From IMG/VR virus record IMGVR_UViG_3300017917_001123, positions 186,001 to 250,000 of that record: a DNA stretch of 64,000 nt; one strand, given 5' to 3'. How positions within the stretch are numbered: position 1 is the first letter of the stretch; the number at the start of each line of letters is the position of its first letter. A program made the position numbers and the translations under genes. Shown in pieces: positions 32,618 through 50,536 of this stretch. Under the pieces are notes generated by a model, which was given only the letters and a program-made list of their open reading frames with translations, was not told the DNA's origin and searched no databases.

Positions 32618-32662
32618 TTGTGGTGTCCTTATGTAGTTGTCTAAGTGTGTATTATACTGCCG

Positions 32663-32884
32663 TTATCGGTAGCTGTCAATCAATTCTTTTACCGAATTGT
32701 CGACTTCGTTGACCTCGTCCAGGAATGCCCAAAGCATCATAGTGATCACAATGCGAGCATCAACGGCGTCTGCTTCGGGGAGTGTGCGGACAAAACGATC
32801 CACATCCTCCCGGGAGCCCATGCCCCAAATCAGATCAGCCAGAATGCGCTGTTTGGCGTTCAGGCCCTCGATCTGGATCATCAT
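32663..32884 (-). CDS. Early hypothetical protein
   Basis: 73 aa, coupled to the upstream gene. Confidence 0.7.
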   Translation of the reverse strand: MMIQIEGLNAKQRILADLIWGMGSREDVDRFVRTLPEADAVDARIVITMMLWAFLDEVNEVDNSVKELIDSYR

Positions 32885-33153
32885 ACTGCCTCCAGCATGT
32901 TAGCTGGCACTCGCCACAGACCCTGTGCGGTACGGACTGTGATGTACTTGATGGCGATCTTTTCCACAGAACCCGTCATGTCCACACCGCGCTTGGTAGA
33001 GTGGAAACGAACGGCCTGCCCAATCTTCAGTGAGCGTTTTACACTCTTCTGGAGGCTAGCACGGGCAAATTTGATGGCATCGATCATGCTTCCCAGTTCA
33101 GTGTCAGTCCAGTTGCCAAACATGATCGCAGAGTTGACTTGCTTGATATCCAT
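32881..33153 (-). CDS. Early hypothetical protein with SH3/KOW-like C-terminus
   Basis: LKIGQAVRF...GSVEKI...WRVPANML. Own promoter and RBS. Confidence 0.75.
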   Translation of the reverse strand: MDIKQVNSAIMFGNWTDTELGSMIDAIKFARASLQKSVKRSLKIGQAVRFHSTKRGVDMTGSVEKIAIKYITVRTAQGLWRVPANMLEAV

Positions 33154-33225
33154 TTGTGAGCTCCTTTGTTTCAGTGTATGTGTGTATTATACGGTCTAGA
33201 ATTGGTTTTGTCAACCAAAGACCCT

Positions 33226-33435
33226 TCAACAATCAGGGTCAAAATCCATCCACTCAGTGAGCTCATCGGGCTGGCCGTCGTCCTCGTATTCGTCTTCGTC
33301 GAGGATGTCGTTGGCACGCATCATATCAGCCACATCGTCTTCACTCATGTAAGCCAGGGCCATCTCTGCGACTGCTTGGGCAGAGATCAAACCTTCGTCC
33401 ATCATCTCAATCAGCTTGTTGGTCTGTGTACGCAT
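33226..33435 (-). CDS. Small very acidic early protein
   Basis: Own promoter and RBS. Ends EWMDFDPDC. Confidence 0.75.
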   Translation of the reverse strand: MRTQTNKLIEMMDEGLISAQAVAEMALAYMSEDDVADMMRANDILDEDEYEDDGQPDELTEWMDFDPDC

Positions 33436-33523
33436 CTTGGGCTCCTTTTGTTTAGTGTATGTGTGTATTATACGGCCAATTTACCAGTTTGTCAACCCCT
33501 TTGACTGTTGTATTTTTGCCACA

Positions 33524-33709
33524 CTAGTCAATCTGTACGTCAATCAGCTTGCCGTCCCTAAAGATGTAGTACTCGTTGATGCGACCGTAATAGGCCCAGA
33601 TACAGCCATTGCCTTCTGTGAGGGTATAGCTGGTGATGCCCTTTTGCTTGAGTTCCTCTGTGACAACCATGACTTCCAGAGGATTGAGCCTAGGATGAAT
33701 GCTGATCAT
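33524..33709 (-). CDS. Early hypothetical protein
   Basis: ATG 33709 follows the upstream stop. Confidence 0.6.
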   Translation of the reverse strand: MISIHPRLNPLEVMVVTEELKQKGITSYTLTEGNGCIWAYYGRINEYYIFRDGKLIDVQID

Positions 33710-33710
33710 A

Positions 33711-33959
33711 TCAACCCCAGTCCTTCTTGTCGCCGTTGCGTTCGTTGTCGTCGTATCCGGCCATGTACTCAGTGACTTCATCCTCAGTCAAGTCAGTGAC
33801 TTCTGGGAAGTTGTAGGTACCGTTGGGGAACCAGTGAGGCTTAGGGCCACGGCCGTAATAGCTGTCGGCACTTCCACGATCGTAGAGGCTACCATGACGA
33901 CCACGATCAAACTGGACGCCCTTAAGGGCACGAACAACCTTTTCCTTTTCGGTAAACAT
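33711..33959 (-). CDS. Early hypothetical protein
   Basis: HGSLYDRGSADSYYGR...EYMAGY. Confidence 0.75.
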   Translation of the reverse strand: MFTEKEKVVRALKGVQFDRGRHGSLYDRGSADSYYGRGPKPHWFPNGTYNFPEVTDLTEDEVTEYMAGYDDNERNGDKKDWG

Positions 33960-34135
33960 TAGATTTCCTCCTTGATCATCAGTGTGCCCATGTACATCAA
34001 CATCAGGCTAGTCACTGCCACGCCAATGCTGGCAATCAGGTGCGATGTTTCGATGCTGTTCTCAACACCACCGACTCCGAAGCCTGCGCCAACCAAGCCA
34101 ACGATAAATGCCACTGCGCCAATCTTTTGTTTCAT
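33959..34135 (-). CDS. Small two-TM membrane protein
   Basis: Two hydrophobic segments. Own promoter and RBS. Confidence 0.7.
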   Translation of the reverse strand: MKQKIGAVAFIVGLVGAGFGVGGVENSIETSHLIASIGVAVTSLMLMYMGTLMIKEEI

Positions 34136-34316
34136 ATTCAGCTCCTGTTTGTTTAGTGTATGTGTGTAGTATAGCTTCAATTTACCACTTTGTCAACCGT
34201 TTTTAGGACCTGTTGTGTAAAAACAACACCCCCTTCGATTCGCTGATAAAGCTCTGCGACTGCCTGTACATAGAAACGCATAATGCGGCCCTTGCTGGTA
34301 ATCAGTGTGTATTCCA

Positions 34317-34493
34317 TCAACGATCCTTCATACGCTTGAACACAGCCATCATCTCTTTGTCATTCTCCAGCTTCTTGCGGAGCTTCTCCCAAGCACGATC
34401 CTCATCCAAGTGTTCGTTGTTCACAGAACGGCCGTTGCTCAGGTCCATGTTCCGCTTGTCCCACTTGGCCTGTTGCTTCTTGGAAATCTTCAT
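34317..34493 (-). CDS. Small early protein
   Basis: Promoter plus AGGAG. Ends VFKRMKDR. Confidence 0.65.
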   Translation of the reverse strand: MKISKKQQAKWDKRNMDLSNGRSVNNEHLDEDRAWEKLRKKLENDKEMMAVFKRMKDR

Positions 34494-34656
34494 TGCTTTG
34501 CTCCTTGCTATGTGTGTATTATACAACCGGTTTTACCAAATGTCAACCAAAAGATCTGTTGTATTTTTGCCACAAAAGGTGAACCCCGCGTACTTCACAG
34601 TAGGCAGGGTTCGGGGGTTGCCCGGGACACTACCCCCGGGACTTTGGAGCGATCGT

Positions 34657-34932
34657 TTAGAGTGTGATGCCCATTGCTTCGGCTTTGTAGCCTAGAGCAA
34701 CGATACGGCGTGATGGGCGACCCAACTCGTATTCAGTAACGGTAACGCCATTGCCTGCTGTGCGTGAGTTCGCATAAACAGCATAACCAGCTTGGCGGAT
34801 ACGGCTTGCTTCTGCGCTGATGTTGCCAATGCCGAAACGCTTCTTGGCTTCGCTTTGCGTCAACTTCTGACCAGCTTGAAGTGCTGTAAACAATTTACCT
34901 GTTTTTGTTTCTGGATTAATTCTCTTTAACAT
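34657..34932 (-). CDS. Winged helix-turn-helix protein
   Basis: KLFTALQAGQKLTQSEAKKRFGIGNISAEASRIRQAGYAV followed by a beta-wing. Confidence 0.7.
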   Translation of the reverse strand: MLKRINPETKTGKLFTALQAGQKLTQSEAKKRFGIGNISAEASRIRQAGYAVYANSRTAGNGVTVTEYELGRPSRRIVALGYKAEAMGITL

Positions 34933-34987
34933 ATTTTTTTCCTCTATATAAAGGCTGACTACTGCCAGCGTTCTACTATTATAGCAC

Positions 34988-35434
34988 CTAGGCCAGGCCT
35001 TGTCTAGCTTTTTGGAGTTTTTCCTCCTGCGCCATTGCCCAAGCCCGATCAAAATTAGGGCTAGAAACTCTATCTGTAAGCCAATTGGTAAATCCATCAA
35101 TCAAAGGCAGGCGCATAGCTATTTCGTCTGACTTCTCCCACCAACTGTAATCAATATCAGGGCCTTCACGGGTAACACCTACTTGGCGCAGACCTGATTG
35201 CTTGAGCAGGACGGTGTGCTTCCATTTGCGTAGGACAACATCCTCAACCTCACGCCAATGACGTAGTGCCCAGGACTCTACTTCATCGCCCCGCTGTTCT
35301 AGCTCAACAATGAGTCCACGAACAGCATCCAGTCTACGACCAAGGGCTTCAATCTCAGCATCTGCTTGAGCCCAGTCCTTATAGAACTGTGGAGTTACAT
35401 ATTCAACTGTTCTTTTTGATCGAAACATTGGCAC
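34988..35434 (-). CDS. Early hypothetical protein (start uncertain)
   Basis: ORF in minus-strand operon. Confidence 0.55.
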   Translation of the reverse strand: MPMFRSKRTVEYVTPQFYKDWAQADAEIEALGRRLDAVRGLIVELEQRGDEVESWALRHWREVEDVVLRKWKHTVLLKQSGLRQVGVTREGPDIDYSWWEKSDEIAMRLPLIDGFTNWLTDRVSSPNFDRAWAMAQEEKLQKARQGLA

Positions 35435-35606
35435 GGAAGAAGGCTCCTAGGATAACCACGGCAAACCAGTTGTAGAGTGTGTAAGGGTCTTGACCAAGCA
35501 CGCCGGGGAAGAGTTGATTGAATGCCCAGATCGTTAGCAAAGGCCCGATAGCAACCACAAGGATGACTAGAGCAACGACACTGGCGATGGTAAACAGACT
35601 TTTCAT
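35403..35606 (-). CDS. Small membrane protein
   Basis: Two hydrophobic helices. GGAG RBS. Confidence 0.7.
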   Translation of the reverse strand: MKSLFTIASVVALVILVVAIGPLLTIWAFNQLFPGVLGQDPYTLYNWFAVVILGAFFRANVSIKKNS

Positions 35607-35642
35607 GTATTCTCCAAGAAAGGGGCACTCTGGCCCCTACTA

Positions 35643-36080
35643 TCACATCAATGCTGGTTCAGCGTTGGCCAAAATGTCCTCGACCTTAGACATTGCTTCT
35701 GCCTCAGACTGAACAGCAGTCTTGACAGAGGCCTGACCAGTCTTGGTCTTAGCCTTAGCTTCCTTCTTAGCAGGAGCCTTAGCCTTAGCCTTAGTTGCCT
35801 TAGCCTTAGGAGCAGCCTTAGCCGGCTTAGCAGTAACGCCACGCTTGTCAGCCGCCGCTTCGAGAGCCGCTTGGACTTCTTTGTTACCGTTGGCAAAGTC
35901 GATGCTCAACAGGAACGCTACAGCGTCTTCCTTAGACATCGGGTGACGCAACTCGACGATGTCAATGTCCTTGTGGCCATTCTTGGCAAGTACTTTGACA
36001 CGCAGGGCATCGTTACAGAAACGAACCTTGAACTCACCATTCAAGCGCGAAACACCAGCATGAGAAAAAACGTTAGACAT
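35643..36080 (-). CDS. Protein with histone-H1-like Lys/Ala tail
   Basis: AKPAKAAPKAKATKAKAKAPAKK encoded by AAGGCT repeats. Confidence 0.75.
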   Translation of the reverse strand: MSNVFSHAGVSRLNGEFKVRFCNDALRVKVLAKNGHKDIDIVELRHPMSKEDAVAFLLSIDFANGNKEVQAALEAAADKRGVTAKPAKAAPKAKATKAKAKAPAKKEAKAKTKTGQASVKTAVQSEAEAMSKVEDILANAEPALM

Positions 36081-36169
36081 AAAATACCTTTCTGTGTGTG
36101 TTTAAAAAGTTAACAGCAATCTCTTACTGTTTTAATAGTATAGCACCAAAATGCCCAAAAGTCAACCCC

Positions 36170-36340
36170 TTAGGCGCCATAGTAAGGGCTGAATTCCTCA
36201 TCGGATTGTGGCTTAAATGCCACATCTTTGAGTTGTTTAACGGTCCAATCCATTGCCGCCGGATTGGGCTCAAATTCCGGCACTCCGTCCTCAGAAACAT
36301 CGTAGTCCGTGTCCTCGGTGATCATTGCGAAACGACTCAT
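36170..36340 (-). CDS. Small acidic protein (56 aa, not in ORF track)
   Basis: Manual translation MSRFAMITEDTDYDVSEDG...PYYGA. ATGA overlap with the upstream gene. Confidence 0.6.
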   Translation of the reverse strand: MSRFAMITEDTDYDVSEDGVPEFEPNPAAMDWTVKQLKDVAFKPQSDEEFSPYYGA

Positions 36341-36525
36341 AGCTCTACCTCCTCATCAATTACTTCAATGTCAGTGATCCGAAACTCACCTGCGTCTGTG
36401 CTGACCCCACAAAACGCATCTCGGAAACTTTGGTTCTCAGCTAGGAAGTTATAGACATCCTGCTTGTCAGTGCCCTCAGGCACTTCAATCTCTTGCCTAA
36501 GGGTTGTGGTTACCATTACCTTCAT
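36337..36525 (-). CDS. Small acidic protein
   Basis: ATGA-coupled 62 aa ORF. Confidence 0.65.
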   Translation of the reverse strand: MKVMVTTTLRQEIEVPEGTDKQDVYNFLAENQSFRDAFCGVSTDAGEFRITDIEVIDEEVEL

Positions 36526-36908
36526 TCGTCTGCCTCCAGTGCTTCGTGTTCAAACGCATCAGTCAGCAAGCCGTTAAACTCGCCGTAGAACTCAACATAC
36601 CACTTGCCGTCTTTGCGGAGGATGTAGTTGTATTCCTCTCCTTGTGCTTCGCGACGGTACTCTGCGAAGTCCTTGTACATACGCTGAGGGCAGTCCTCGC
36701 CACGTTCCTTGTAGAAAGTACAACCGCTAACAGTTTCGTCCAGCGAGCTCATGTCGCCGTTGTCCAACAGCTCGCGGACCAGGAACGGGTCTGTGTAGTG
36801 GTTCTGCAGAATCTTGCCGTTGTGATCCAAGTAGCCGTCCCAGTGGCAGTAAATTTGACCAACAGTACCGTCTGCGTACTCCAGGGCGATAGTAGAACGA
36901 GTTGCCAT
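36522..36908 (-). CDS. Phage early hypothetical protein
   Basis: MATRSTI...IYCHWDGY..HNG motif. Own promoter. Confidence 0.8.
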   Translation of the reverse strand: MATRSTIALEYADGTVGQIYCHWDGYLDHNGKILQNHYTDPFLVRELLDNGDMSSLDETVSGCTFYKERGEDCPQRMYKDFAEYRREAQGEEYNYILRKDGKWYVEFYGEFNGLLTDAFEHEALEADE

Positions 36909-36989
36909 TTATGAGCTCCTTTTGTTTCAGTGTGTATGTATTATATGACCAATTTACCAGTTTGTCAACCAACCCTACAGCCTGTAGGG

Positions 36990-37352
36990 TTATTGTTGCT
37001 CAAAAGCCACAGTAACGTCGACCTCAATGTCCGTAACATCGCCAGCAAGGTCAAACTTCAAGCCGGTAACAGCCGCGCCGTATTGTGCGGCCTTAAGGCG
37101 GCGCTCAACTTCGTGGCGCAGGTCGCCCAGCATATCGTTGAGAAAGTCCTGTGCGCTGTCTTTAACGCCTTTCAGCGTCTCTTGGATGCCGTTGCGGCTC
37201 ATGTCCTCTTGCCCGTCTACGATCATGTCGATAAACGCTTCGGTCTGACCAACGAGGGCTTGCTCAACAATAGCGTCGATCAGCTCGCGCTTTGCCCACA
37301 GGATCTCGCTGGCCTTAAAGGTCTGCTCACGTGCCTTGTAAACAACAGTCAT
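36990..37352 (-). CDS. Early hypothetical protein
   Basis: Own promoter and RBS. Confidence 0.75.
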   Translation of the reverse strand: MTVVYKAREQTFKASEILWAKRELIDAIVEQALVGQTEAFIDMIVDGQEDMSRNGIQETLKGVKDSAQDFLNDMLGDLRHEVERRLKAAQYGAAVTGLKFDLAGDVTDIEVDVTVAFEQQ

Positions 37353-37409
37353 TTCTTGCTCCTTTTCCTAACTGTCTAGCCTATAGTATAACACCGGTTT
37401 TACCACTTG

Positions 37410-37655
37410 TCAACCGATATCTGCAGTAACCCTGTTCTCTGTAGGGTTATAGGTCAGGAACACTTTGCCAAAGGTAGCACCGCGCCCGTCTTCGTCGTGG
37501 TACTCTACTTTGTAGCAAAACTGTCCGCCGTTGGTTATGCCCAGGAACTTGGCACCCTTGAACGCCATCATCTTGTAACCGCAGGAGTCCAAGGTCATAG
37601 CTAAGGTGTGGGTGCTGTAGCTGGTTAGGAGTTTGAGTGTTTCAGCAGTAATCAT
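37410..37655 (-). CDS. Early hypothetical protein
   Basis: ATGA-coupled. Stop lies in the next promoter's TTGACA. Confidence 0.7.
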   Translation of the reverse strand: MITAETLKLLTSYSTHTLAMTLDSCGYKMMAFKGAKFLGITNGGQFCYKVEYHDEDGRGATFGKVFLTYNPTENRVTADIG

Positions 37656-37897
37656 CCCAGCACCACCACTTCTGTGCCCTCAACAACAGGCTCGCCTTCG
37701 TCATCGTAGTCAAAGTCGTCTTGGTCTACGACCTTGTGCATACGGTGGTAGTCGCTGTACTTGACATAGCCTACCTCTACGCTGTCTACAGTAGGAGCCA
37801 CTTGAGTGCGCCAGTGGTCGCCGTAGTTGTATTGGAAGTGGACTTCGGCGTCCGGGTTCTCCATTTGTAGCAGTTCAATGAGCTCGGAAACTTTCAT
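37652..37897 (-). CDS. Small acidic early protein
   Basis: MKVSELIELL...PDAEV N-terminus. Confidence 0.75.
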   Translation of the reverse strand: MKVSELIELLQMENPDAEVHFQYNYGDHWRTQVAPTVDSVEVGYVKYSDYHRMHKVVDQDDFDYDDEGEPVVEGTEVVVLG

Positions 37898-38142
37898 GCT
37901 TGCTCCTTAAAGTAAACGACTTTGATGCGTCCGTTAGTTTGTACGAAAGCACAGTTGTCTTCAAACTGTACATCCGGATGGGCTAGGACCTGCTTAGTAA
38001 ACATTTTAACAGTTCGCACGTTAACGGCACCCTGCCAATCCTCGCGGGCCACGCCCTCATTGTAACTGTACTTGCCGCGGCAACCGCACATGCAACCTAC
38101 TTTGCCCGAATAAACTTTTGCAACTTTGCTGACGTTTAACAT
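37894..38142 (-). CDS. Early protein with CMCGC motif
   Basis: YSGKVGCMCGCRGKY. Own promoter and RBS. Confidence 0.75.
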   Translation of the reverse strand: MLNVSKVAKVYSGKVGCMCGCRGKYSYNEGVAREDWQGAVNVRTVKMFTKQVLAHPDVQFEDNCAFVQTNGRIKVVYFKEQA

Positions 38143-38238
38143 TTCTGCTCCTGCTTGTTTAGTGTATGTGTGTAGTATAACACAAATGGTTTTACCTGTC
38201 AACCCCTTTTATAAAAGCCCTTTCGGGCTGTAGGGTTA

Positions 38239-38388
38239 TTAGGCAGGTACTACTTTAATAAGCATAAAACTGTTTAGGCTGTTAAGTTCCTGATGGAACG
38301 CGGCTACAGCTTGTTTACGTGTGCAAGGGCGTGTTAGGGCTGTATGCACTTGGTTTTTGTAGTAGTAATGTATAACGTATTGTTTCAT
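38239..38388 (-). CDS. 49 aa basic early protein (not in ORF track)
   Basis: Manual translation MKQYVIHYYYKNQVHTALTRPCTRKQAVAAFHQELNSLNSFMLIKVVPA. Own promoter and AGGAG. Confidence 0.7.
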   Translation of the reverse strand: MKQYVIHYYYKNQVHTALTRPCTRKQAVAAFHQELNSLNSFMLIKVVPA

Positions 38389-38438
38389 GGTCGCTCCTTT
38401 AGTGTATGTGTGTAGTATAACACACTTTTACCAAAGTG

Positions 38439-38660
38439 TCAACCCCAAGCGTTATATAACCCTATAGCGCATACGGATATAGCTACAACGTTAACAATGA
38501 ACTGTGGCTTATTTGCCACACGTATAGTCCATGTCAAGTACAGTAGCCCGCCTAGCAAACCAAACAGGGGGTCCAACTTTAGCTCCCTGTAAAAGTTCAT
38601 CAACACGTACATTGCCAAGATGCAGGCAGTGCCTGCCCACTGTAGTACTGTATTAAGCAT
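38439..38660 (-). CDS. Small three-TM membrane protein
   Basis: Hydrophobic. ATG overlaps the upstream stop. Confidence 0.7.
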   Translation of the reverse strand: MLNTVLQWAGTACILAMYVLMNFYRELKLDPLFGLLGGLLYLTWTIRVANKPQFIVNVVAISVCAIGLYNAWG

Positions 38661-38832
38661 TGTCAAATTCCATTACGTCACAACGCAAGTCGTCTACAAT
38701 GTCCTCAATCCTATTGTGCGTCTCATAGCACACGTCACTGTCACCCAGCACCTCTTGTATTAATGCGTCCGCATCCTCTAGCAAATCTATTGCCTCACGC
38801 AGTTTAGCTGCCTTTTGTTTTGCTGTTAACAT
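38653..38832 (-). CDS. 59 aa acidic helical early protein (not in ORF track)
   Basis: Manual translation MLTAKQKAAKLREAIDLLEDADALIQEVLGDSDVCYETHNRIEDIVDDLRCDVMEFDNA. Own promoter and AGGAG. Confidence 0.75.
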   Translation of the reverse strand: MLTAKQKAAKLREAIDLLEDADALIQEVLGDSDVCYETHNRIEDIVDDLRCDVMEFDNA

Positions 38833-38917
38833 GTTCGCTCCTTGTTGTTTAGTGTATGTGTGTAGTATAGCACAGTTTTACCACTTTGTCAACTGTGCTA
38901 TACAATAACCCTATGCT

Positions 38918-39283
38918 TTAGTCAACTACGTGCACGTCAGCAAAACTAGCATAGCCAAACTTAGCTTCCCAGCTAGCAATAAAGTCTCTGCCTACGTCTA
39001 AGCTAACAAAGTCATCACCCTGCATGCCCTGCTCGCTATAGCACAAGTCTACAACAAGCCCATGCTCTGTAATAAACTGCATTAAGTCTATTTTAAATTG
39101 TTTGTCTGTGTAAATTAGCCCGTCTTTATAAACGTCCCAAGTGTCTGTGTTAAAAAACACACGCAGTTCCCCATACTCCTTGTCCTCGCTAACAAAGCCC
39201 AAGCGCATGTCTGTAATCTCTACAGCTTTTTGCACGTTGCTCCAGTAGCCATCGCCGCTAGTGTTAAAAATAACTTTTTGCAT
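38918..39283 (-). CDS. Acidic early protein, 121 aa, proline-free
   Basis: TSGDGYWS...GLIYTD...YSEQGMQGDDFVSLDV. Own promoter and RBS. Confidence 0.8.
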   Translation of the reverse strand: MQKVIFNTSGDGYWSNVQKAVEITDMRLGFVSEDKEYGELRVFFNTDTWDVYKDGLIYTDKQFKIDLMQFITEHGLVVDLCYSEQGMQGDDFVSLDVGRDFIASWEAKFGYASFADVHVVD

Positions 39284-39382
39284 TTGTTTGCTCCTTGCAG
39301 TGTTTAAGTGTGTAGTATAGCACCAATTTACCACTTTGTCAACTACTACGTAAAAAAACCCTACGCAGGGTAGGGCTATTGT

Positions 39383-39655
39383 TTAAATGTTAGCTATAAC
39401 ACGAACGTATTGGAATCCGGCGCAACGGGTAGCAAAATTGCGTACAGAACCCGAACGCTTTACAGGGTTTTTAATTGTACTACGCAAAAAGTTATACAAT
39501 ACATCGGCGGAACTGGCATTGTTTAAAACAAAAGTAACACTACGACGCGGATTACTAGTGTTTGCTTTTGTTTTAAGCGTACGGTCGGTATATGTACGTA
39601 CATAGTTTACATTTGCTGCACGTGCTACAGCGCGGACTTGTTTAGTGCTTAACAT
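39383..39655 (-). CDS. Basic early protein, 90 aa, glutamate-free
   Basis: Own promoter and AGGAG. Confidence 0.7.
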   Translation of the reverse strand: MLSTKQVRAVARAANVNYVRTYTDRTLKTKANTSNPRRSVTFVLNNASSADVLYNFLRSTIKNPVKRSGSVRNFATRCAGFQYVRVIANI

Positions 39656-39703
39656 ACTTGCTCCTTTAGTGTCTGTGTAGTATAGCACCAATTTACCAGT
39701 TTG

Positions 39704-40228
39704 TCAAGTCTTTTTGTAAAAAATATGCTGTCCAATCTGTTGTATTTTCACAACACTCCTTGACCAAATAGGTTCTTTAATGTAGTCCGCATGATAGAAG
39801 GTACTATGTTCCAACCCTGCTACCCTATAGCCCTCCTGGAGCACCTTGTGAGCAACCTCCTTGCTTTCTGCCCACAAAGGCCCTTTAGGTTGAGCATAGC
39901 GTTTCTTCTTGTCCAATGTCCAGCTGAACTGAGCCCGAGCATAGACAACCTTACATATATCAGTACCCCAGCGTTTCTCCTTTAGTCGATTGAGTGTTAC
40001 CTGTGCGACAGCAAACTTACCTAACCGGTCCTCCACACCGGCTTCATAGAAAATGTTCTTGGCCAAACAGTCTGCTTCAGCAGAAGTATGCTGAACACGC
40101 TGTTGAGTCTTGATCAAATAGATCTTGATCTCTTGTATGTCATCGTGAAGGGTAGAGATCTCCAGTTGCTGGAACGCCAGGATGGCGAACATGGCCACCC
40201 CAGCTAGGATCTTCCATATGCCGTTCAC
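39704..40228 (-). CDS. Cell wall hydrolase (SleB/Hydrolase_2 family)
   Basis: CLAKNIFYEAG, AVAQVTLNR, ICKVVY..AQFSW, IGQHIFY. N-terminal TM segment. Confidence 0.9.
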   Translation of the reverse strand: MNGIWKILAGVAMFAILAFQQLEISTLHDDIQEIKIYLIKTQQRVQHTSAEADCLAKNIFYEAGVEDRLGKFAVAQVTLNRLKEKRWGTDICKVVYARAQFSWTLDKKKRYAQPKGPLWAESKEVAHKVLQEGYRVAGLEHSTFYHADYIKEPIWSRSVVKIQQIGQHIFYKKT

Positions 40229-40851
40229 TTGTGTGGCTCCAAGTTGTTCTTCTCTACACCGTCCTTATACCAGTCGGTGAGTTCCTCGTCCTCTTCGTCC
40301 TCATACTCGGCCATAGACTCGGAGATGCCATACTCATCATCCAGTTCGTCGCCAACGACATCACGCACGGTTTTAGAAGTCTCACCGCCGAACTCAATAC
40401 ACTCGTCACTGCCGTTATACCAACGACCTACATAGGCCATGCCTGGTTCGTAGTAGGTAGCCTCTACTTCAAAGCCGTCATCTACTAGGGCCTCGTAGAT
40501 GCCTACGGGCGGGGCCCACGCAGAGTCAAAGCCGAACTCAATGGTGTTGTTCTCAATCTTTATATCAGGGTCGTAGGCATCAACATCCCACTTGGTGCCC
40601 CAATGATTCACGCAGAAGTCATACCAGTTGGCCACACCATATTTGGCAATGTTCTCGGCACTCCGGCGCTCGAGCTCAATCTGGTCCGGATTCGTTTCGT
40701 CACCAACTCGACCTGCTACAATGTTCAGGTCCTCTGGAATCGGAACCACATGCTTACAGAAGTTGCCTTCCTTAATGGCCTCAACGAGGGCTTCAAGTTT
40801 CTGGGTATCTTCGTGGCTGATTACCACACGGTTGTTGCACCAATTAGGCAT
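40225..40851 (-). CDS. DUF1281/YubB-like ferredoxin-fold protein
   Basis: MPNWCNN, WYDFCVNHWGTKWD, FDSAWAPP, YYEPG motifs. Confidence 0.8.
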   Translation of the reverse strand: MPNWCNNRVVISHEDTQKLEALVEAIKEGNFCKHVVPIPEDLNIVAGRVGDETNPDQIELERRSAENIAKYGVANWYDFCVNHWGTKWDVDAYDPDIKIENNTIEFGFDSAWAPPVGIYEALVDDGFEVEATYYEPGMAYVGRWYNGSDECIEFGGETSKTVRDVVGDELDDEYGISESMAEYEDEEDEELTDWYKDGVEKNNLEPHK

Positions 40852-40861
40852 AGTAGGCTCC

Positions 40862-41125
40862 TTAGTTGAATTCGTAGAAAGTGACGCTAGGATCGATGCT
40901 TTGGAGTTCTTGAGCACAACGGCGCAGGAACTGGGCACGGGCACGGACTTGGCTTGCGGGCAGTTCGCCATCGCAGGTAAGGTTCTCTGGGCTAAGATCC
41001 GCATCCAGCGAATCCGCAATCTTTTGACGGTCCTGGGCGTTGAGCAGGCTGAGCTCCTTGCCGTTGAAAATTTTGGACCAGCTGTTTTTCATTTCAACAT
41101 AGGTTTCCAAGTTCTGAATATTCAT
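40862..41125 (-). CDS. Early hypothetical protein
   Basis: LSPENLTCDGE motif. Own promoter and RBS. Confidence 0.75.
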   Translation of the reverse strand: MNIQNLETYVEMKNSWSKIFNGKELSLLNAQDRQKIADSLDADLSPENLTCDGELPASQVRARAQFLRRCAQELQSIDPSVTFYEFN

Positions 41126-41182
41126 TTTCGCTCCTGTTTCGTTAGTGTCTAGTGTATAGTATAACATCGGTTTTACCGGATG

Positions 41183-41377
41183 TCAACCCCTTTTGGTAAC
41201 TTTTTTAACTAATACGAAAGTACGACCACGCAAATCGAACTTCAAAGGCTTATTGAACACCTTGTGCTCGTTGGTGTCTTTTTTGACATAGGCTAGGCAC
41301 TTGTCCCCGTCTAGGAGGTACAGGTGGTTACAGTCCGACCCGTCCTCCCAAACTGTAGTCTCACGCATCCACTTCAT
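41183..41377 (-). CDS. Early hypothetical protein
   Basis: ETTVW...NHLYLL...FDLRGRTF. Confidence 0.7.
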   Translation of the reverse strand: MKWMRETTVWEDGSDCNHLYLLDGDKCLAYVKKDTNEHKVFNKPLKFDLRGRTFVLVKKVTKRG

Positions 41378-41631
41378 TACATGCTCCAGTAGGCTTCTGA
41401 GCTGGGCGAGCAATAGCGCGGAGTGTCATAGCGTTCCTTATACTCAGCACCGCCCATCAAGTTCTTGCGAGTTACATAAGTTTCGTGGATTTCGCGAATG
41501 TATCCTGGGCGAACTGGGTTGGCTCGCTCCACAGCCGCCAGCGTCATGTCCGCAAAGTCCGTCTTGGACACCAGCTTCATGCCCTCTTTGCATCGCTTGT
41601 CCAACTTATAAATTTCTACGGTATATTCCAT
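41377..41631 (-). CDS. Early hypothetical protein
   Basis: Ends DTPRYCSPSSEAYWSM. Own promoter. Confidence 0.75.
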   Translation of the reverse strand: MEYTVEIYKLDKRCKEGMKLVSKTDFADMTLAAVERANPVRPGYIREIHETYVTRKNLMGGAEYKERYDTPRYCSPSSEAYWSM

Positions 41632-41755
41632 GTCGCTCTCCTTAGTGTCTAGTGTATAGTATAACACAGGTTTTACCACTTGTCAACCAAAAAAAGAGGG
41701 TGTTGCTTTTATACAACACCCCCATAAAGGGCCTGCGTTGCACAGGCCGGAGCAA

Positions 41756-42103
41756 TTAATCCAATCGGCTACCTGCGTAGGCTTCCACGCCCAACATCTG
41801 CTTCAGGAACTCTGCGGCCGCCTCGGCACCCGCTTCCAAAGTGTCCACGTTCTGGACGCCCAAACCACTGGGGTTCCACAGCTGAAGTCCACCACCGTAA
41901 GCAGGACGGAAACCTGCCTCCTTCAGTGCCATACCCAGTTTGGTGTTGCCACGAACCTTGTAGACCGTAACCCAAGCAAAGCCACAGGCGTATTGGTCAC
42001 GTCCGCCCAGCTTCTCCTGGAAGAACTTGGTTGCCGCTTGACGGGCTTCCTGCTTGGCACCCTCAACAAAACTCAGAACCTGCTCTTTAGTGAATCCACT
42101 CAT
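41756..42103 (-). CDS. Early hypothetical protein
   Basis: ACGFAWV...AYAGSRLD. Own promoter. Confidence 0.75.
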   Translation of the reverse strand: MSGFTKEQVLSFVEGAKQEARQAATKFFQEKLGGRDQYACGFAWVTVYKVRGNTKLGMALKEAGFRPAYGGGLQLWNPSGLGVQNVDTLEAGAEAAAEFLKQMLGVEAYAGSRLD

Positions 42104-42160
42104 CTTTCGCTCCTTTAGTTAACTATCTAGCCTATAGTATAGCACCGGTTTTACCTTTTG

Positions 42161-42859
42161 TCAACCGACAATTGGAATAACCCTACGAACGAATCCGGTA
42201 TTGTCCTTCTTAGCACGGCCCTTGGCTTTCAACCCAGCGATAACACCCTTAGGGTCCAAAAAGCGCAGGTCAGTGTCATCAGCATTGAAAACAGGGCGGC
42301 CCATGTAAGCTTCGGGCAGTTTATCAAAGACCATAGCCACGTTCATGCCCTGCGCCACAGCCTTAGCCACGTCCGCATCGTTACCGTCTGCGGCACTGAA
42401 GGTCAAGTGGTAGTTCTTAAGGTGCGACACTTTGCGGCCCAGGACCTTAGTGTAGTCATAGAACTGTACTTCCGGAAACTTCTCAATGATACCGTACTTC
42501 TCCCAGCTCAAGTCCGATGTACCATTCAAGCGGAACACGGGCGTCAAACCCAACTTCGCGGCCTGCTTGATGCCCAGTTTAATGTCTGCTTCCAAGTCCT
42601 TCATGAAAGCATCGCGGTTCTCAAAGAAGTACTTGGTCTTGCGGATGCGAGCCTGCTGGATCACGTTGGTGTTCTCACCTTTGCGGAACATGCCGCCACG
42701 ACCGGCAGTATTAAGGCAAGCGGCTGTACAACCTGCGGTGCGCTTAGGGCATACTTCTTTGCCCGACAAGTCAGCAGGAGCAAGGTGTAGGATGTAGCTC
42801 AGGTAACCCAGCTTCGTACCCTTCTGGATCTTAGGATTTGCAGTGCTCAATAGTTTCAT
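42161..42859 (-). CDS. GP88-family radical-SAM-like protein
   Basis: CPKRTAGCTAAC (Cx6Cx3C), FRLNGTSD, QFYDYTK, YHLTFS motifs. Confidence 0.75.
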   Translation of the reverse strand: MKLLSTANPKIQKGTKLGYLSYILHLAPADLSGKEVCPKRTAGCTAACLNTAGRGGMFRKGENTNVIQQARIRKTKYFFENRDAFMKDLEADIKLGIKQAAKLGLTPVFRLNGTSDLSWEKYGIIEKFPEVQFYDYTKVLGRKVSHLKNYHLTFSAADGNDADVAKAVAQGMNVAMVFDKLPEAYMGRPVFNADDTDLRFLDPKGVIAGLKAKGRAKKDNTGFVRRVIPIVG

Positions 42860-42930
42860 CTCTTGCTCCTTATTAATGTTTCTAGTCTCTAGTATAACAC
42901 CGGTTTTACCACTTGTCAACCAATACCCGT

Positions 42931-43269
42931 TCAATCTCCACGGGTATCTGTATTCAGCATGGGCTTCAACTTGCGGCGGAGTTCCACTTCCAAGTCGTGT
43001 CCTGCCTGCTTGCCACGTGCCGTGCCCAGAACGCGAACACCTATTTCAGTCTTGTCGTTGAGCTCACGCAGGGCCACGCAAAGGAGCCAATTCTTGCTTT
43101 CAGTCTTTGCGCGATAGAAATGCTTGGCTGCACGTGTCCGTGCGCTCTTAAGAGCTGTGGACTCTGTTTTGGCTGTGACACCAACATAAGTCATGCCGTT
43201 GACCGTAAGCTCATAGACTACATGAGTACGATCTGCACGCTTTTTACGGGGACGCTTTTCTAAGTTCAT
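42931..43269 (-). CDS. GIY-YIG-like protein (leaderless start)
   Basis: VVYEL..NGMTYVGVT...R...E...LN. ATG 6 nt after the -10. Confidence 0.6.
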   Translation of the reverse strand: MNLEKRPRKKRADRTHVVYELTVNGMTYVGVTAKTESTALKSARTRAAKHFYRAKTESKNWLLCVALRELNDKTEIGVRVLGTARGKQAGHDLEVELRRKLKPMLNTDTRGD

Positions 43270-43350
43270 GAGTGTAGTATAACACGGTTTTACCACTCTG
43301 TCAACCCCTAAAGAATACCCGAGTGGGCCGTAGGGTTTCAGAAATTCCGG

Positions 43351-43379
43351 TTGACATTCGGTAAAACCTGTGCTATACT
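43351..43379 (+). promoter_or_regulatory. Divergent plus-strand copy of the early promoter
   Basis: TTGACA-ttcGGTAAAacctgtgc-TATACT. Confidence 0.85.
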
Positions 43380-43513
43380 GTAGGCACAATGAGAGATAAG
43401 AAGAAAGCCATAAGGGCACGAGGGTTCGAACAGACTTGCTGGGGATGGACGGCGAGGGCCACCCCCCTATTTGGCTCGGTGATGAAAATATAGTAGGCTG
43501 CTCAAAATAGCCG

Positions 43514-43546
43514 CAAAAAAACCCTAGGCCAAATACCTCCTAGGGT
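43514..43546 (-). terminator. Minus-strand terminator
   Basis: ACCCTAGG-10nt-CCTAGGGT followed by a U run on the minus strand. Confidence 0.8.
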
Positions 43547-43781
43547 CTCCCTGCCCGGGTCTACCGCAACGTGACTCCGAACCGTTTGCGCTCAGTCTAC
43601 TCTAGGCCCAGGGCCTTCGACTCTAGCACAGTGACTTCTGTGGCAATTCACAGCACCTAAGGTCTGTACTGTTACCAGTATTCTTTCACGCTAGGCGTTT
43701 AACCGCATTATCAGTCTAGAGCAATTCCGTCACCTTAGTCATCGGCCGAATTGTTAACTGTTTCGTGTGCTGTTACGGCAC
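43514..43781 (-). ncRNA. Candidate structured non-coding RNA (~265 nt) downstream of tRNA
   Basis: No minus-strand ORF of note. Bounded by a TAAGTA box and a terminator. Multiple 6-7 bp complementary segments. Confidence 0.5.
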
Positions 43782-43802
43782 AAAATACTTAGCTCTGCCC
43801 GG

Positions 43803-43879
43803 TGGTGGGCCCAACAGGACTCGAACCTGTGACCAAGCGATTATGAGTCGCCTGCTCTAACCAACTGAGCTATAGGCCC
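43803..43879 (-). tRNA. tRNA-Ile2 (CAT, lysidine type)
   Basis: GGGCCTATAGCTCAGTTGGTTAGAGCAGGCGACTCATAATCGCTTGGTCACAGGTTCGAGTCCTGTTGGGCCCACCA. Cloverleaf with encoded CCA. Anticodon arm matches E. coli ileX as recalled. Confidence 0.9.
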
Positions 43880-43902
43880 CCGGGATTAATATTATACAGG
43901 AT

Positions 43903-44853
43903 TTACTTCCTTAATCCTAGTGCGGCCTGTAGCTTTTGGGCGGCATTCATAGTATTAGCAGTCTGCCCGTAGGGTGTATATGTTTGTCCCGCACCTGTGC
44001 CGTTGGGTTTTTCTGCTGATCCTAGGGCCTGTGCAGCGGGGTCACCAGTGGCCTGTGCAGCGGGGTTGGGTATGCCCGTGTCTACAAGCGATCTAACCTG
44101 TACACCTTCTGGATCCGCAATGTCTACGAAGGTCCAGTTGCCCAACAGCACAGGATTACCATCTACACGACGATTCCACTTACGCATATAGTACTTGTCT
44201 GCAGCGGGGTTCAGCCCGAGCTGGTCTACAAGGTTAGCAAACACAGAGTCGATCAGGATCATTGTCTCCGCACCTTCTAGAACTCGTAACCAATCGAATA
44301 CGGAATAACCTTCTAGCTCCCGCAACTCAATACATTGTACACCCGGTTCAACAATGGACAGATCAATGTCATAGCTCATATCACTAGCATGACCCTGATA
44401 TACCATATAGCGTTCTTGTGTGACTACACTATTATACAGTGATTTTTCTGCAGCGGGGTCCCGGTCTATACACTCGGCCAACTCCCACTTGTGACTAAAT
44501 GGTACTTCCGCTTGAGCATACTTGTATTGATCGAACTTAAACTGGGCAAAGTGACTCTTATTAGTACGCTCTGGATGACTACTCAAATACTGATACAACC
44601 ACAATTCCTCAGTTACTCCAATAGCGGTCAACTGCTTGTGCGGATTCTCATAAAAGAAAGCGCCATATTCATCTACGGGCACTGACATCCAACGAACCCA
44701 GGGAGCCGCTCGAACCATTTGTTGATAAAAGGGTTCACATACGGGCCAATATACTTCGTAGCCTCTACGTGTATATTCCTTAGCGATAGGTAGAGCAATG
44801 ATGATATCACCAAGTCCTCTACTCTGAATAAAACCAATTCTTTGTTGTGACAT
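43903..44853 (-). CDS. GT9-like glycosyltransferase
   Basis: SRGLGDIIIALP, DWLRVLEGAETMILIDSVFANL motifs. Confidence 0.7.
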   Translation of the reverse strand: MSQQRIGFIQSRGLGDIIIALPIAKEYTRRGYEVYWPVCEPFYQQMVRAAPWVRWMSVPVDEYGAFFYENPHKQLTAIGVTEELWLYQYLSSHPERTNKSHFAQFKFDQYKYAQAEVPFSHKWELAECIDRDPAAEKSLYNSVVTQERYMVYQGHASDMSYDIDLSIVEPGVQCIELRELEGYSVFDWLRVLEGAETMILIDSVFANLVDQLGLNPAADKYYMRKWNRRVDGNPVLLGNWTFVDIADPEGVQVRSLVDTGIPNPAAQATGDPAAQALGSAEKPNGTGAGQTYTPYGQTANTMNAAQKLQAALGLRK

Positions 44854-45083
44854 TTAAAGATCCTTATACGTGTGCAGCGGGGTCCCTACTATTAACATTC
44901 TGTAGGGTTCTGTAGACAATACTTACCACCCCATCCATCTGGCGCACGTATATACTGACGCGGACCATCACGCTCTAAGCAGTAGTCACGACCATAACAA
45001 CCTCGAGTAGTGATACAACCACTCAGTGATACCATAGCAAATATCACGATCAAAGATCTGCATGCATGCAAGAACAGCGGGGT
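44032..45083 (+). repeat. Same-strand dispersed motif TGCAGCGGGGT (5 exact copies, 1 partial)
   Basis: Copies at ~44032, 44056, 44200, 44449, 44873. CAGCGGGGT at 45075. Confidence 0.85.
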
Positions 45084-45098
45084 ATTAGCTTTCAACAT
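44892..45098 (-). CDS. Small putative lipoprotein
   Basis: Hydrophobic stretch plus LSGC lipobox. Confidence 0.55.
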   Translation of the reverse strand: MLKANTPLFLHACRSLIVIFAMVSLSGCITTRGCYGRDYCLERDGPRQYIRAPDGWGGKYCLQNPTEC

Positions 45099-45222: not shown

Positions 45223-45267
45223 AGTGTATATAGTATAGCACCACCGCATGGTTTTGTCAATGATCAA

Positions 45268-50511: not shown

Positions 50512-50536
50512 ATGGATATTTAACTTGGTATATAAC

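What the first reader, a model, noticed from the sequence alone, without database searches (positions are those of the whole stretch)
38627..39367. ~740 bp tract with no GA or GG on the + strand (no TC/CC on the coding strand)
Seen: between GG at 38625-26 and GG at 39368-69, all ~120 G residues (hand count) are followed by C or T. TC and CC remain common on the same strand, so the purge is strand-specific. The tract spans two whole early genes, two promoters and intergenic DNA, and it constrains the proteins (no Pro, only AGY Ser). Chance cannot plausibly explain this. Established: some phages replace G with 7-deazaguanine derivatives in sequence-specific contexts (GA/GGC in phage CAjan, as recalled), and a QueC-like gene lies in this window. 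TC/CC are also the contexts of UV and deaminase C-to-T mutation. Inference, alternatives: (a) a modification-free template strand so host RNA polymerase can read the first genes; (b) evasion of a defence that targets GR/YC sites; (c) localized strand-specific hypermutation. Best candidate here for an undescribed system.
Basis: partly seen in the sequence, partly recalled or inferred. Interest (0 to 1): 0.92.

Follow-up and report, generated by a model that had tools for sequence, protein, structure and literature searches.

The report
Early phage genes written without YC
In a group of uncultured freshwater giant phages, a set of small early genes has been rewritten by selection so that their messenger RNA holds no C preceded by U or C. 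This is the two-letter signal read by the bacterial terminator Rho, so the purge looks like a built-in way of hiding these first transcripts from a host factor.

Summary
On the + strand, 38627-39367 holds 119 G and no GA or GG. The next-longest such gap in the 64 kb is 127 nt, and codon-shuffled controls expect 23 and 12 sites in the two genes, never fewer than 8 and 2.

Read on the coding (-) strand, this is an absence of 5'-YC-3'. It runs from a terminator loop through two sigma-70 promoter cassettes (121-aa and 59-aa genes) to codon 13 of a membrane-protein gene.

It is not a one-off. The window comes from a 331-kb pond jumbo myovirus. Relatives carry YC-free tracts of 250-1496 nt on the sense strand of the same small-gene families. 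The tracts start at promoters, and in one relative the purged strand flips with gene orientation.

It is not hypermutation. Invariant serines are kept through AGY codons, and genes 27% divergent in DNA are both YC-free.

The 5' leaders of all early cassettes are also YC-poor. Untranscribed promoter spacers and normally translated coding regions are not.

Best reading, at moderate confidence: selected transcript-level avoidance of the Rho primary-site ligand (5'-YC). The main rival is immunity to an unknown YC-specific RNA nuclease or modifier.

I found no 7-deazaguanine genes.

The parts
38627..39367 (-). YC-free tract. No TC or CC on the sense (-) strand, which equals no GA or GG on the + strand. 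It contains 119 sense-strand C, all preceded by A or G.
39357..39377 (-). Intrinsic terminator hairpin plus T-run of the upstream cassette. The tract begins in its loop. The 5' arm (CCCTACC) holds the last YC before the tract.
39314..39342 (-). Promoter P1: TTGACA, 17-nt spacer, TATACT, with TG before the -10 element. It is followed by an AC-rich, YC-free leader and an AAGGAG Shine-Dalgarno sequence.
38918..39283 (-). gene121: a 121-aa acidic protein of a phage-only family (GDGYWS...SEQGMQGDD). It has 0 YC in 57 C, no Pro, and 7 Ser, all AGY.
38864..38892 (-). Promoter P2: TTGACA, 17-nt spacer, TATACT. It lies inside the tract, and no intrinsic terminator separates gene121 from it. Its spacer has no YC, unlike most promoters of this family.
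38653..38832 (-). gene59: a 59-aa acidic protein with 0 YC in 27 C. Homologs in five other viral contigs hold 0-3 YC.
38439..38660 (-). gene75: a 73-aa hydrophobic (putative membrane) protein whose start overlaps the end of gene59. The tract ends at its codon 13 (sense-strand CC at 38626-38625, TC at 38620-38619). The rest of the gene has 10 YC in 42 C. This family is normally not purged (48 of 52 members).
39383..39655 (-). Upstream neighbour: a basic 90-aa protein (family H). It is not purged here (21 YC in 60 C), but its homologs lie inside YC-free tracts in L060, L061 and L096. It belongs to the same mobile set of small early genes.

Best explanation
Shown: natural selection has removed every 5'-YC-3' (TC and CC) from the sense strand of whole sigma-70 transcription units. 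These units encode a mobile set of small, mostly acidic early proteins in a clade of uncultured freshwater jumbo myoviruses. The proteins themselves are conserved.

Shown: the purge tracks transcription. It starts at promoters, follows gene orientation, and also affects the untranslated leaders of all early cassettes. It does not affect untranscribed promoter spacers or ordinary translated coding regions.

Inferred: the selective agent reads YC on exposed, ribosome-free early RNA. The one bacterial factor known to do this is the termination factor Rho. Each of its six primary binding clefts binds one single-stranded 5'-YC dinucleotide, and translating ribosomes block its action.

My proposal is that these cassettes are 'Rho-blind' transcripts. 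Host RNA polymerase starting at the very strong promoters P1 and P2 can run through gene121, gene59 and into the downstream gene without Rho loading. No intrinsic terminator lies between them. This would hold even in the first moments of infection, when phage messages are poorly covered by ribosomes. It would be a passive, sequence-encoded counterpart of the N, Q, put and Psu anti-Rho devices of other phages.

Why only this gene set needs full immunity is not explained.
For: - The tract is real and far beyond chance.
- It recurs: 29 distinct YC-free tracts of 250-1496 nt in related viral contigs, always holding ORFs on the YC-free strand. YC/C over about 1000 ORFs is bimodal, with modes at 0.40 and at 0-0.1.
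- It is transcription-linked. In L047 the purged strand switches with gene orientation. Of 26 tract starts, 17 lie within -60 to +40 nt of a promoter -35 element, against 13.5% expected. Promoters at the 5' edge of a tract still carry YC in their spacers, whereas internal ones do not.
- It is selection, not mutation. Invariant Ser positions are AGY in 20 of the 21 Ser codons of the low-YC homologs (11 YC or fewer) and a TCN/AGY mix in YC-rich ones. Replacements of YC are mixed. L001 and L006 differ at 97 of 363 nt, yet both have 0 YC. Low-YC states sit at several separate places on a poorly resolved family tree.
- It follows gene families. The fraction with YC/C below 0.1 is C 9/9, D 12/12, B 10/14, E 4/5 and H 4/5, against 1/52 for the membrane gene.
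- Exposure matters. In 282 promoter-leader-ORF units, leaders have YC/C of 0.09 (observed/expected CC 0.22, TC 0.34; CT 1.11, TT 1.93). Promoter spacers are at 0.42 and coding regions at 0.36. NYC codons are freely used at synonymous sites of normal early genes.
- Leaders of phage T4 and Xanthomonas phage BUDD show no such depletion.
- The Rho primary site binds 5'-YC, rut sites are YC-rich and G-poor, and ribosomes mask them (PMC12360218; PMC9499579; PMC2988021).
- The tract RNA has G at 26% and C at 16%, and no terminator between the two cassettes.
Against: - Rho binding is cooperative and needs several YC. A Rho-only model predicts few YC, not exactly zero in 743-1496 nt in at least four lineages.
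- It also gives no reason to purge right up to the stop codon of single-cassette tracts (L006, L015, L046).
- The purged genes have strong Shine-Dalgarno sites, so they should be protected by translation like their neighbours.
- T4, which also meets Rho, shows no YC avoidance.
- Leader sequences are related by descent, as repeated cassettes, so their YC poverty is not 282 independent observations. It could instead reflect selection for an AC-rich leader motif.
- The host is unknown, so the presence of Rho is assumed, not shown.
- No transcript data exist.
Confidence: 0.4

Rival explanations
1. Immunity in cis to a single-hit, YC-specific activity on single-stranded RNA. This could be an endoribonuclease, or an RNA-modifying enzyme such as an ADP-ribosyltransferase or deaminase. 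It could belong to a host defence or to a phage host-shutoff factor. Only the first-needed genes, for example inhibitors of that activity, are written without its site. This would parallel ACA-less or GCU-less messages that escape MazF or MqsR.
For: - The purge is complete: 0 of 121 to 218 C in tracts of 743-1496 nt, in several lineages. This is what a one-hit-kills enzyme predicts.
- The purge covers the stretch from the transcription start to the stop codon.
- The purged products are small acidic proteins, typical of inhibitors.
- Gain and loss across relatives looks like an arms race.
- A defence enzyme with dinucleotide specificity on mRNA exists: CmdT, which acts on GA (preprint 10.1101/2024.02.24.581662).
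- T4, BUDD and PA5oct lack the signature, so the agent may be special to these hosts.
Against: - No nuclease or modifier with YC specificity came to mind or turned up in the searches made here.
- In normal cassettes the coding region holds tens of YC, so removing 2-3 from the leader would hardly help against a single-hit enzyme. Yet leaders are strongly depleted and synonymous sites are not.
- No candidate enzyme was seen in the window.
Confidence: 0.27
2. Avoidance at the DNA level on the non-template strand. A single-strand-specific cytosine deaminase or nuclease with TC/CC preference (APOBEC-like or DenB-like) attacks the strand displaced during heavy transcription. YC is lost there by mutation pressure combined with selection for robust codons.
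For: - The specificity (TC plus CC) and the strand fit.
- Promoter-delimited tracts fit transcription-dependent exposure.
- C-to-T is the commonest single replacement.
Against: - It does not explain why leaders are depleted while synonymous sites of equally transcribed neighbouring genes are not.
- Neighbouring cassettes with identical promoters are normal.
- The sense strand gains A as much as T.
- Ser is kept through AGY.
- No bacterial enzyme of this kind is known to act on phage DNA; this last point rests on my own knowledge.
Confidence: 0.08
3. Cause on the template strand: G followed by a purine is avoided on the transcribed strand. The reason would be that such G carry a phage base modification (the 7-deazaguanine idea, the reader's alternative a), or that they are the preferred sites of guanine oxidation, and a lesion there would block host RNA polymerase on the incoming genome.
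For: - It is the right strand.
- A block would be a single-hit event, which fits complete absence.
- From my own knowledge, not tested here: GA/GGC is the reported preQ0 motif of phage CAjan, and 5'-GG and 5'-GA are the most easily oxidised guanines.
Against: - No DpdA, QueC, QueD, QueE or FolE match passed a curated cut-off in about 80 proteins of the window. Only 64 of 331 kb was examined.
- GGT is purged too.
- Replication and other early genes have normal GR content on their template strands.
- A DNA lesion model cannot distinguish leader from coding region.
Confidence: 0.06
4. A single past hypermutation event, or chance, or an assembly artefact.
For: The tract has sharp limits.
Against: - The chance probability is about e^-75, and shuffles never reach 0.
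- The state is present in independent samples and in divergent relatives.
- The ORFs are intact and conserved, with AGY serines.
- The state persists over 27-55% DNA divergence.
Confidence: 0.01

Closest known systems
Phage devices against Rho-dependent termination: lambda N/nut and Q/qut, HK022 put RNA, P4 Psu
   Same: The proposed purpose is the same: let host RNA polymerase read through early phage DNA despite Rho. In both cases the action falls on early, host-polymerase transcripts.
   Different: Those devices act in trans, or through a discrete RNA or DNA element that modifies the polymerase or binds Rho. Here no such element or protein is identified. The immunity would be encoded diffusely, by removing the Rho ligand (YC) from every position of the transcript, coding sequence included.
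Toxin-site-free messages: ACA-less mRNAs that escape MazF and GCU-less mRNAs that escape MqsR (recalled from my own knowledge)
   Same: A short RNA motif is absent across a whole message, so that message alone stays functional when the motif-reading enzyme is active.
   Different: Those motifs are 3 nt long and the cognate enzyme is known. Here the motif is a degenerate dinucleotide, which costs Pro, four Ser codons and all NYC codons. It covers multi-gene units of up to 1.5 kb, and no cognate enzyme is known.
CmdTAC defence: CmdT ADP-ribosylates GA dinucleotides of single-stranded mRNA
   Same: It shows that bacteria target phage mRNA through a dinucleotide. Its authors argued that escape by site loss is implausible for so short a motif. 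This finding would be an example of exactly such an escape, for selected genes.
   Different: The dinucleotide differs (GA, not YC). The sense strand here is rich in GA because it has many Asp and Glu codons, so CmdT itself is not the agent.
Restriction-site avoidance in phages, and CpG (ZAP) or TC (APOBEC3) depletion in eukaryotic viruses
   Same: All are compositional evasion of a sequence-reading host factor.
   Different: Restriction avoidance is symmetric on both strands and genome-wide. CpG and TC depletion are partial. Here the purge is strand-specific, complete, and limited to particular transcription units.
PeSL-type mobile early cassettes of T4-type phages: promoter-early plus stem-loop units flanking small ORFs (recalled from my own knowledge)
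   Same: The architecture of the early block matches. There are about 20 units, each with a terminator hairpin, a near-consensus sigma-70 promoter, a short leader and a small ORF, and they are shuffled among relatives.
   Different: PeSLs explain how the cassettes move. They do not explain why some cassettes lack YC.

Membership tests
Phage 7-deazaguanine DNA modification system (DpdA with the preQ0 pathway) | Genes for DpdA and for FolE, QueD, QueE and QueC in the phage genome | tested here: not met
   I ran Pfam, NCBIfam or PHROGs scans of about 80 window proteins. No QueC or DpdA hit appeared. The radical SAM proteins match twitch/SPASM families, and the QueE model scored 31.8 bits against a cut-off of 206. 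Only 64 of the 331 kb of the genome could be examined.
Phage 7-deazaguanine DNA modification system (DpdA with the preQ0 pathway) | Avoided motif equals the modification motif (GA and GGC, as recalled for CAjan) | tested here: not met
   All GG are absent, including GGT, which that motif would spare. About 33 GG would be expected in 741 nt at the window's density.
Deaminase hypermutation footprint (APOBEC-like) | Loss of YC by C-to-T only, T enrichment, damaged coding sequence | tested here: not met
   YC-to-YT accounts for only about 40-45% of replacements. The sense strand gains A as much as T. Invariant Ser is kept as AGY. The ORFs are intact and conserved.
Restriction-site (palindrome) avoidance | Motif absent on both strands | tested here: not met
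   TC (48) and CC (46) are common on the + strand of the same tract.
Rho-evading (rut-free) transcript | Absence of the single-stranded 5'-YC ligand of the Rho primary binding site, and G exceeding C in the RNA | tested here: met
   There are 0 YC in 741 nt, with G at 26% and C at 16% on the sense strand. The ligand definition comes from PMC12360218 and PMC9499579.
Rho-evading (rut-free) transcript | Pressure confined to transcribed RNA that ribosomes do not cover | tested here: inconclusive
   Leaders have YC/C of 0.09, against 0.42 for untranscribed spacers and 0.36 for coding regions. This fits. However, the leaders are related by descent, and the purged coding regions have good Shine-Dalgarno sites.
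Rho-evading (rut-free) transcript | Reduced Rho-dependent termination compared with a YC-containing version | not testable with these tools
   This needs in vitro transcription with Rho, or bicyclomycin experiments. No RNA runs hold this phage.
Toxin-site-free mRNA (MazF/MqsR type immunity) | Motif absent over the whole message, including the leader | tested here: met
Toxin-site-free mRNA (MazF/MqsR type immunity) | A cognate motif-specific RNA enzyme in the host or phage | not testable with these tools
   The host is unknown. No candidate was recognised among the window proteins.
PeSL-like mobile early cassette | Stem-loop terminator plus sigma-70 early promoter flanking small ORFs, repeated and shuffled | tested here: met
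   Repeat families D1-D7. About 20 promoters of the form TTGACA, 17-nt spacer, TATA(A/C)T. The same gene families appear in different orders in relatives.

The most novel reading that the evidence does not exclude
The YC-free 'dialect' is the footprint of an undescribed activity that inactivates single-stranded RNA at any pyrimidine-C step. This could be a nuclease or a base-modifying enzyme, belonging to a freshwater bacterial defence or to the phage's own host shutoff. Under this reading, the purged module holds the phage's first-wave genes, possibly including the inhibitor of that activity. Those genes must be expressed while everything else is being destroyed.
Probability: 0.27. Interest if true: 0.95.

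Novelty: new variant of a known kind. Interest (0 to 1): 0.85.

Why it matters
Short-motif avoidance is a classic way to read, from sequence alone, what a virus fears. Here the avoided motif is only two letters, yet it is removed completely from whole transcription units. The cost is a restricted amino-acid and codon alphabet. The state is kept over long divergence in a clade of giant phages.

It would also give a natural experiment on what Rho needs to load in vivo, through YC-free and YC-rich orthologs of the same genes. It would point to a rule for designing Rho-proof transgenes.

Either way, the finding makes a concrete question testable with a handful of recoded genes.

Tried and rejected
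**Searches that gave no lead**
- A near-identity DNA search of the tract against 50,697 phage records found no match.
- Pfam and PHROGs gave nothing for the tract proteins. Pfam also found no credible domain for other purged-family proteins or for the L037 fusion protein (one sub-threshold zinc-finger match in L037).
- The AlphaFold model of gene121 is confident (pLDDT 89.5). It has no PDB analogue, and only three uncharacterised viral proteins match it.
- A PDB profile search and the ESM Atlas gave no lead.
- I looked for 7-deazaguanine or other base-modification genes in seven family scans and found none.

**Hypotheses tested and dropped**
- Unstructured mRNA: the folding energy of the tract is not weaker than that of its neighbours once G+C is allowed for.
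- Promoter class: purged and normal cassettes use the same consensus promoters.
- Fixed position next to the membrane gene: this holds in only about a fifth of 57 loci. Elsewhere the tracts sit with the same gene families at other places.
- UV photoproducts (TC and CC are 6-4 hot spots): rejected, because the protected strand is the non-template one, and TT and CT are not avoided.
- Anti-Shine-Dalgarno mimic avoidance in leaders: rejected, because CT and TT are not depleted.
- A codon or tRNA explanation: rejected, because codon junctions and non-coding DNA are purged too.

**Host and transcript data**
- Host inference from bacterial genome contigs returned three uninformative contigs without any purge.
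- Public runs hold only DNA metagenomes kept as contigs, with no RNA. I therefore did not use read laying.

**Control phages, all negative**
- T4, bases 1-50,000.
- Xanthomonas phage BUDD.
- PA5oct, bases 1-50,000.
Full report
**1. The observation**

On the + strand, window 38627-39367 (741 nt) has 119 G, none followed by A or G. GC occurs 53 times and GT 66 times, and TC (48) and CC (46) stay common. GA+GG occur 6506 times in the window, or 0.10 per nt. The 743-nt gap between the flanking GG pairs has a chance probability near e^-75. The next-longest GR-free gap is 127 nt, and no other pair of dinucleotides gives a comparable outlier.

A sliding count shows GR/G falling from about 0.3-0.5 to exactly 0 and back.

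**2. Anatomy**

The genes lie on the - strand, so the property is best stated as 'no 5'-YC-3' on the sense strand'. In the direction of transcription the tract contains the following:
- It starts in the loop of the intrinsic terminator of the upstream cassette (39377-39357).
- It runs through promoter P1 (TTGACA, 17-nt spacer, TATACT; 39342-39314) and an AC-rich leader with AAGGAG.
- It covers gene121 (39283-38918).
- No terminator follows. Next come promoter P2 (38892-38864) and gene59 (38832-38653).
- It covers the first 13 codons of a putative membrane-protein gene, gene75 (38660-38439), which overlaps gene59.

On their sense strand the two genes have 0 YC in 57 C and 0 in 27 C. The 83 other genes of my greedy ORF call range from 0.22 to 0.64. 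The two proteins have no Pro, and all 8 Ser use AGY.

I resampled synonymous codons for these same proteins, using the codon usage of the other early genes. This gives 22.9 and 11.7 YC on average, and never fewer than 8 and 2 in 100,000 trials.

**3. Where the window comes from**

The tail sheath is about 43% identical to those of Pseudomonas phage PA5oct and Agrobacterium phage Atu_ph07. A UvsX-like recombinase, a gp32-like SSB and a DnaB-like helicase are present. The window is bases 186,001-250,000 of a 331,570-bp IMG/VR contig from a pond metagenome. It is therefore an uncultured freshwater jumbo myovirus.

The tract sits in the middle of a 13-kb block (32.6-45.7 kb) of about 20 small cassettes. 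Each has a terminator hairpin, a near-consensus sigma-70 promoter, a short leader and a small ORF.

**4. It recurs in relatives and is tied to transcription units**

Homologs of gene121 were found in 47 viral contigs, of gene59 in 6, and of gene75 in 57. In these loci I found 29 distinct YC-free tracts of 250-1496 nt. Examples:

| Locus | Tract length (nt) |
|---|---|
| L047 | 1496 |
| L049 | 1272 |
| L061 | 1185 |
| L093 | 886 |
| L052 | 851 |
| L060 | 832 |
| L018 | 736 |

Every tract holds ORFs on the YC-free strand. Over about 1000 ORFs, YC/C is bimodal. The main mode is at 0.40, and a separate mode at 0-0.1 holds 36 ORFs. The only ORFs with a GR-poor coding strand are spurious antisense ORFs over the same tracts.

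In L047 the purged strand flips with gene orientation:
- 4979-6474 is YC-free and carries + strand genes.
- 7276-7760 is GR-free and carries a - strand gene.
- 7739-8116 is YC-free and carries a + strand gene.

This excludes replication- or packaging-linked strand asymmetry.

Tract starts coincide with promoters. Of 26 starts, 17 lie within -60 to +40 nt of a -35 element, against 13.5% for random positions. Of 26 ends, 9 lie just before or inside the next promoter, against 10.8%. Promoters at the 5' edge of a tract still carry YC in their untranscribed spacers (L015, L046, L051, L052, L018). Promoters inside a tract, which are read through from upstream, do not.

**5. Does it follow the gene or the locus?**

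It follows a set of small-gene families that travel together but change order and position. The fraction of distinct members with YC/C below 0.1 is as follows:

| Family | Description | Purged members |
|---|---|---|
| C | 74 aa | 9/9 |
| D | 54 aa, ends in DYYVD | 12/12 |
| B | gene59 | 10/14 |
| E | | 4/5 |
| H | basic | 4/5 |
| G | | 7/16 |
| A | gene121 | 15/46, with 10 more intermediate |
| M | membrane, gene75 | 1/52 |

A tract directly upstream of gene75 occurs in only about a fifth of gene75 loci. In the others, tracts lie 1.5-5 kb away with the same families.

**6. Selection, not hypermutation**

At the three invariant Ser positions of family A, the members with 11 YC or fewer use AGY in 20 of 21 cases. 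YC-rich members use a mix of TCN and AGY. A C-to-T process would turn TCN into Leu or Phe codons and cannot produce AGY.

At sites where a YC-rich homolog has YC, the purged genes show the following:
- YT in about 40-45% of cases;
- YA or YG in about 25%;
- RC in about 15-20%;
- both bases changed in about 15%.

Compared with other early genes, the sense strand of the tract loses 6 points of C and gains 3 of T and 3 of A.

L001 and L006 differ at 97 of 363 nt, and at 47 of 121 third positions, yet both have 0 YC. L046 and L047 are about 45-50% identical in DNA to L001 and have 1 and 0 YC. On the family tree, which is poorly resolved, low-YC members sit in several separate places next to YC-rich sisters. 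The state is therefore actively maintained, and has been gained or lost repeatedly.

**7. The clue from leaders**

I extracted 282 promoter-leader-ORF units, with 267 unique leaders, from the window and its relatives. In the roughly 25-nt untranslated leaders only 9% of C follow a pyrimidine. The observed/expected ratio is 0.22 for CC and 0.34 for TC, while CT (1.11) and TT (1.93) are not depleted. In the untranscribed promoter spacers just upstream the fraction is 0.42, and in coding regions 0.36. This holds for the 229 units whose coding regions are normal (leader 104/1048).

In those normal genes NYC codons are used freely at synonymous sites: TTC 74 against TTT 67, and ATC 65 against ATT 68. 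YC/C rises from 0.34 in the first 30 nt of coding sequence to 0.40-0.41 further in.

Controls show no leader depletion:
- T4: TC 1.0 and CC 1.14. A second method gave 0.88 and 0.98.
- Xanthomonas phage BUDD: TC 1.2 and CC 1.09.

Neither phage has a long tract either. The upstream regions of non-early genes in the window are not depleted as a whole: 49 YC in 113 C.

So the pressure falls on transcribed, ribosome-free early RNA. This is hard to reconcile with any DNA-level cause. One caveat applies: the leaders descend from repeated cassettes, so they are not independent observations.

**8. Mechanism**

5'-YC-3' on single-stranded RNA is the ligand of each of the six primary binding clefts of the termination factor Rho (PMC12360218; PMC9499579). 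Rut sites are YC-rich and G-poor. Translating ribosomes mask them, which is the basis of polarity, and T4 early transcription is limited by Rho in vitro (PMC2988021).

The simplest reading is that this phage clade keeps exposed early RNA poor in Rho ligands, and has made one gene module entirely 'Rho-blind'. In the window, polymerase from P1 and P2 would then read without interruption to gene75. The RNA has G at 26% and C at 16%, and there is no intrinsic terminator between the cassettes.

I hold this at about 0.4, for four reasons:
- Rho binding is cooperative, so exactly zero YC over 0.7-1.5 kb is more than the model needs.
- The purged genes have strong ribosome-binding sites.
- T4 shows nothing similar.
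- The reason this module is singled out is unknown.

The main rival (about 0.27) is immunity to an unknown enzyme that inactivates RNA at single YC sites. It explains the completeness of the purge and its extent from transcription start to stop codon. It has a precedent in CmdT, which ADP-ribosylates GA in mRNA, and whose authors judged escape by site loss implausible. It explains the leader-only depletion of normal cassettes less well.

**9. The 7-deazaguanine premise**

Seven family scans of about 80 window proteins found no QueC, DpdA or QueD. The four radical SAM proteins match twitch/SPASM-type families. The QueE model scored 31.8 bits against a cut-off of 206. Only a fifth of the genome was available.

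**10. The proteins**

gene121 folds with confidence (pLDDT 89.5, pTM 0.83) into a small alpha/beta domain. It has no PDB analogue and matches only three uncharacterised viral proteins. In L037 the domain ends a 963-aa ORF. gene59 and families C-F are small and acidic. No function can be assigned.

**11. Verdict**

This is a real, highly non-random, conserved and selected feature. Its nearest relatives in concept are motif avoidance and toxin-site-free messages. Its most likely target is Rho. It appears undescribed: none of the five full-text literature searches returned a paper describing it. The three control phages I scanned, one of them a cultured jumbo relative by tail-sheath similarity, lack it.

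Noticed in passing
window 32600-45750, - strand: The early block consists of about 20 repeated cassettes. Each has a terminator hairpin (AACCCTAC...GTAGGGTT), a near-consensus sigma-70 promoter (TTGACA, 17-nt spacer, TATA(A/C)T, often with TG), an AC-rich leader and a small ORF. This resembles the PeSL mobile cassettes of T4-type phages. Three consecutive promoter copies (38387, 38837, 39287) are exactly 450 nt apart.
   Followed up: partly
window 39383-39655 (-) and 38239-38388 (-): The two genes flanking the gene121-gene59-gene75 unit are poor in GA/GG on their own coding strand (6 of 51 G and 3 of 21 G). For the first this probably reflects a very basic protein with few Asp, Glu or Gly. Its homologs in L060, L061 and L096 lie inside YC-free tracts.
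   Followed up: partly
all early cassettes of the window and loci L002-L115: The 5' leaders are specifically poor in TC and CC (observed/expected 0.34 and 0.22) but not in CT or TT. Leaders of T4 and phage BUDD are not.
   Followed up: yes
window 46564-63100: A cluster contains two twitch-domain radical SAM/SPASM proteins above the NCBIfam cut-off (56447-57802, 60449-61921). It also holds two further radical SAM proteins, two 2OG-Fe(II) oxygenases, two Asp/Arg-hydroxylase-like proteins, a methyltransferase and a cytidylyltransferase-cupin fusion. This may be a peptide- or sugar-modifying auxiliary pathway in a phage.
   Followed up: no
window 5112-5549 (+): A protein with a TnsA-like endonuclease N-terminal domain (E = 8e-22) sits among the tail genes.
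   Followed up: no
window 24080-24640 (-), 42161-42934 (-), 39704-40228 (-), 50952-51623 (+): These ORFs encode an AlgH-like DUF179 protein, a GP88-family protein and two SleB-type cell-wall hydrolases. One of the hydrolases lies in the early block, two cassettes upstream of the tract.
   Followed up: no
L037 3520-6411: In one relative the gene121 domain is the C-terminal end of a 963-aa ORF with normal YC content (406 YC in 823 C).
   Followed up: no
L047 4979-6474 and 7276-8116: This locus has the longest tract found (1496 nt, 218 C, 0 YC). It also has a divergent gene pair, each member purged on its own sense strand.
   Followed up: yes
NC_071039 (PA5oct) 39400-41100: PA5oct's early region has YC-free stretches of 135-187 nt over very small genes. 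They hold only 11-19 C each, so they are not comparable with the purge described here.
   Followed up: partly
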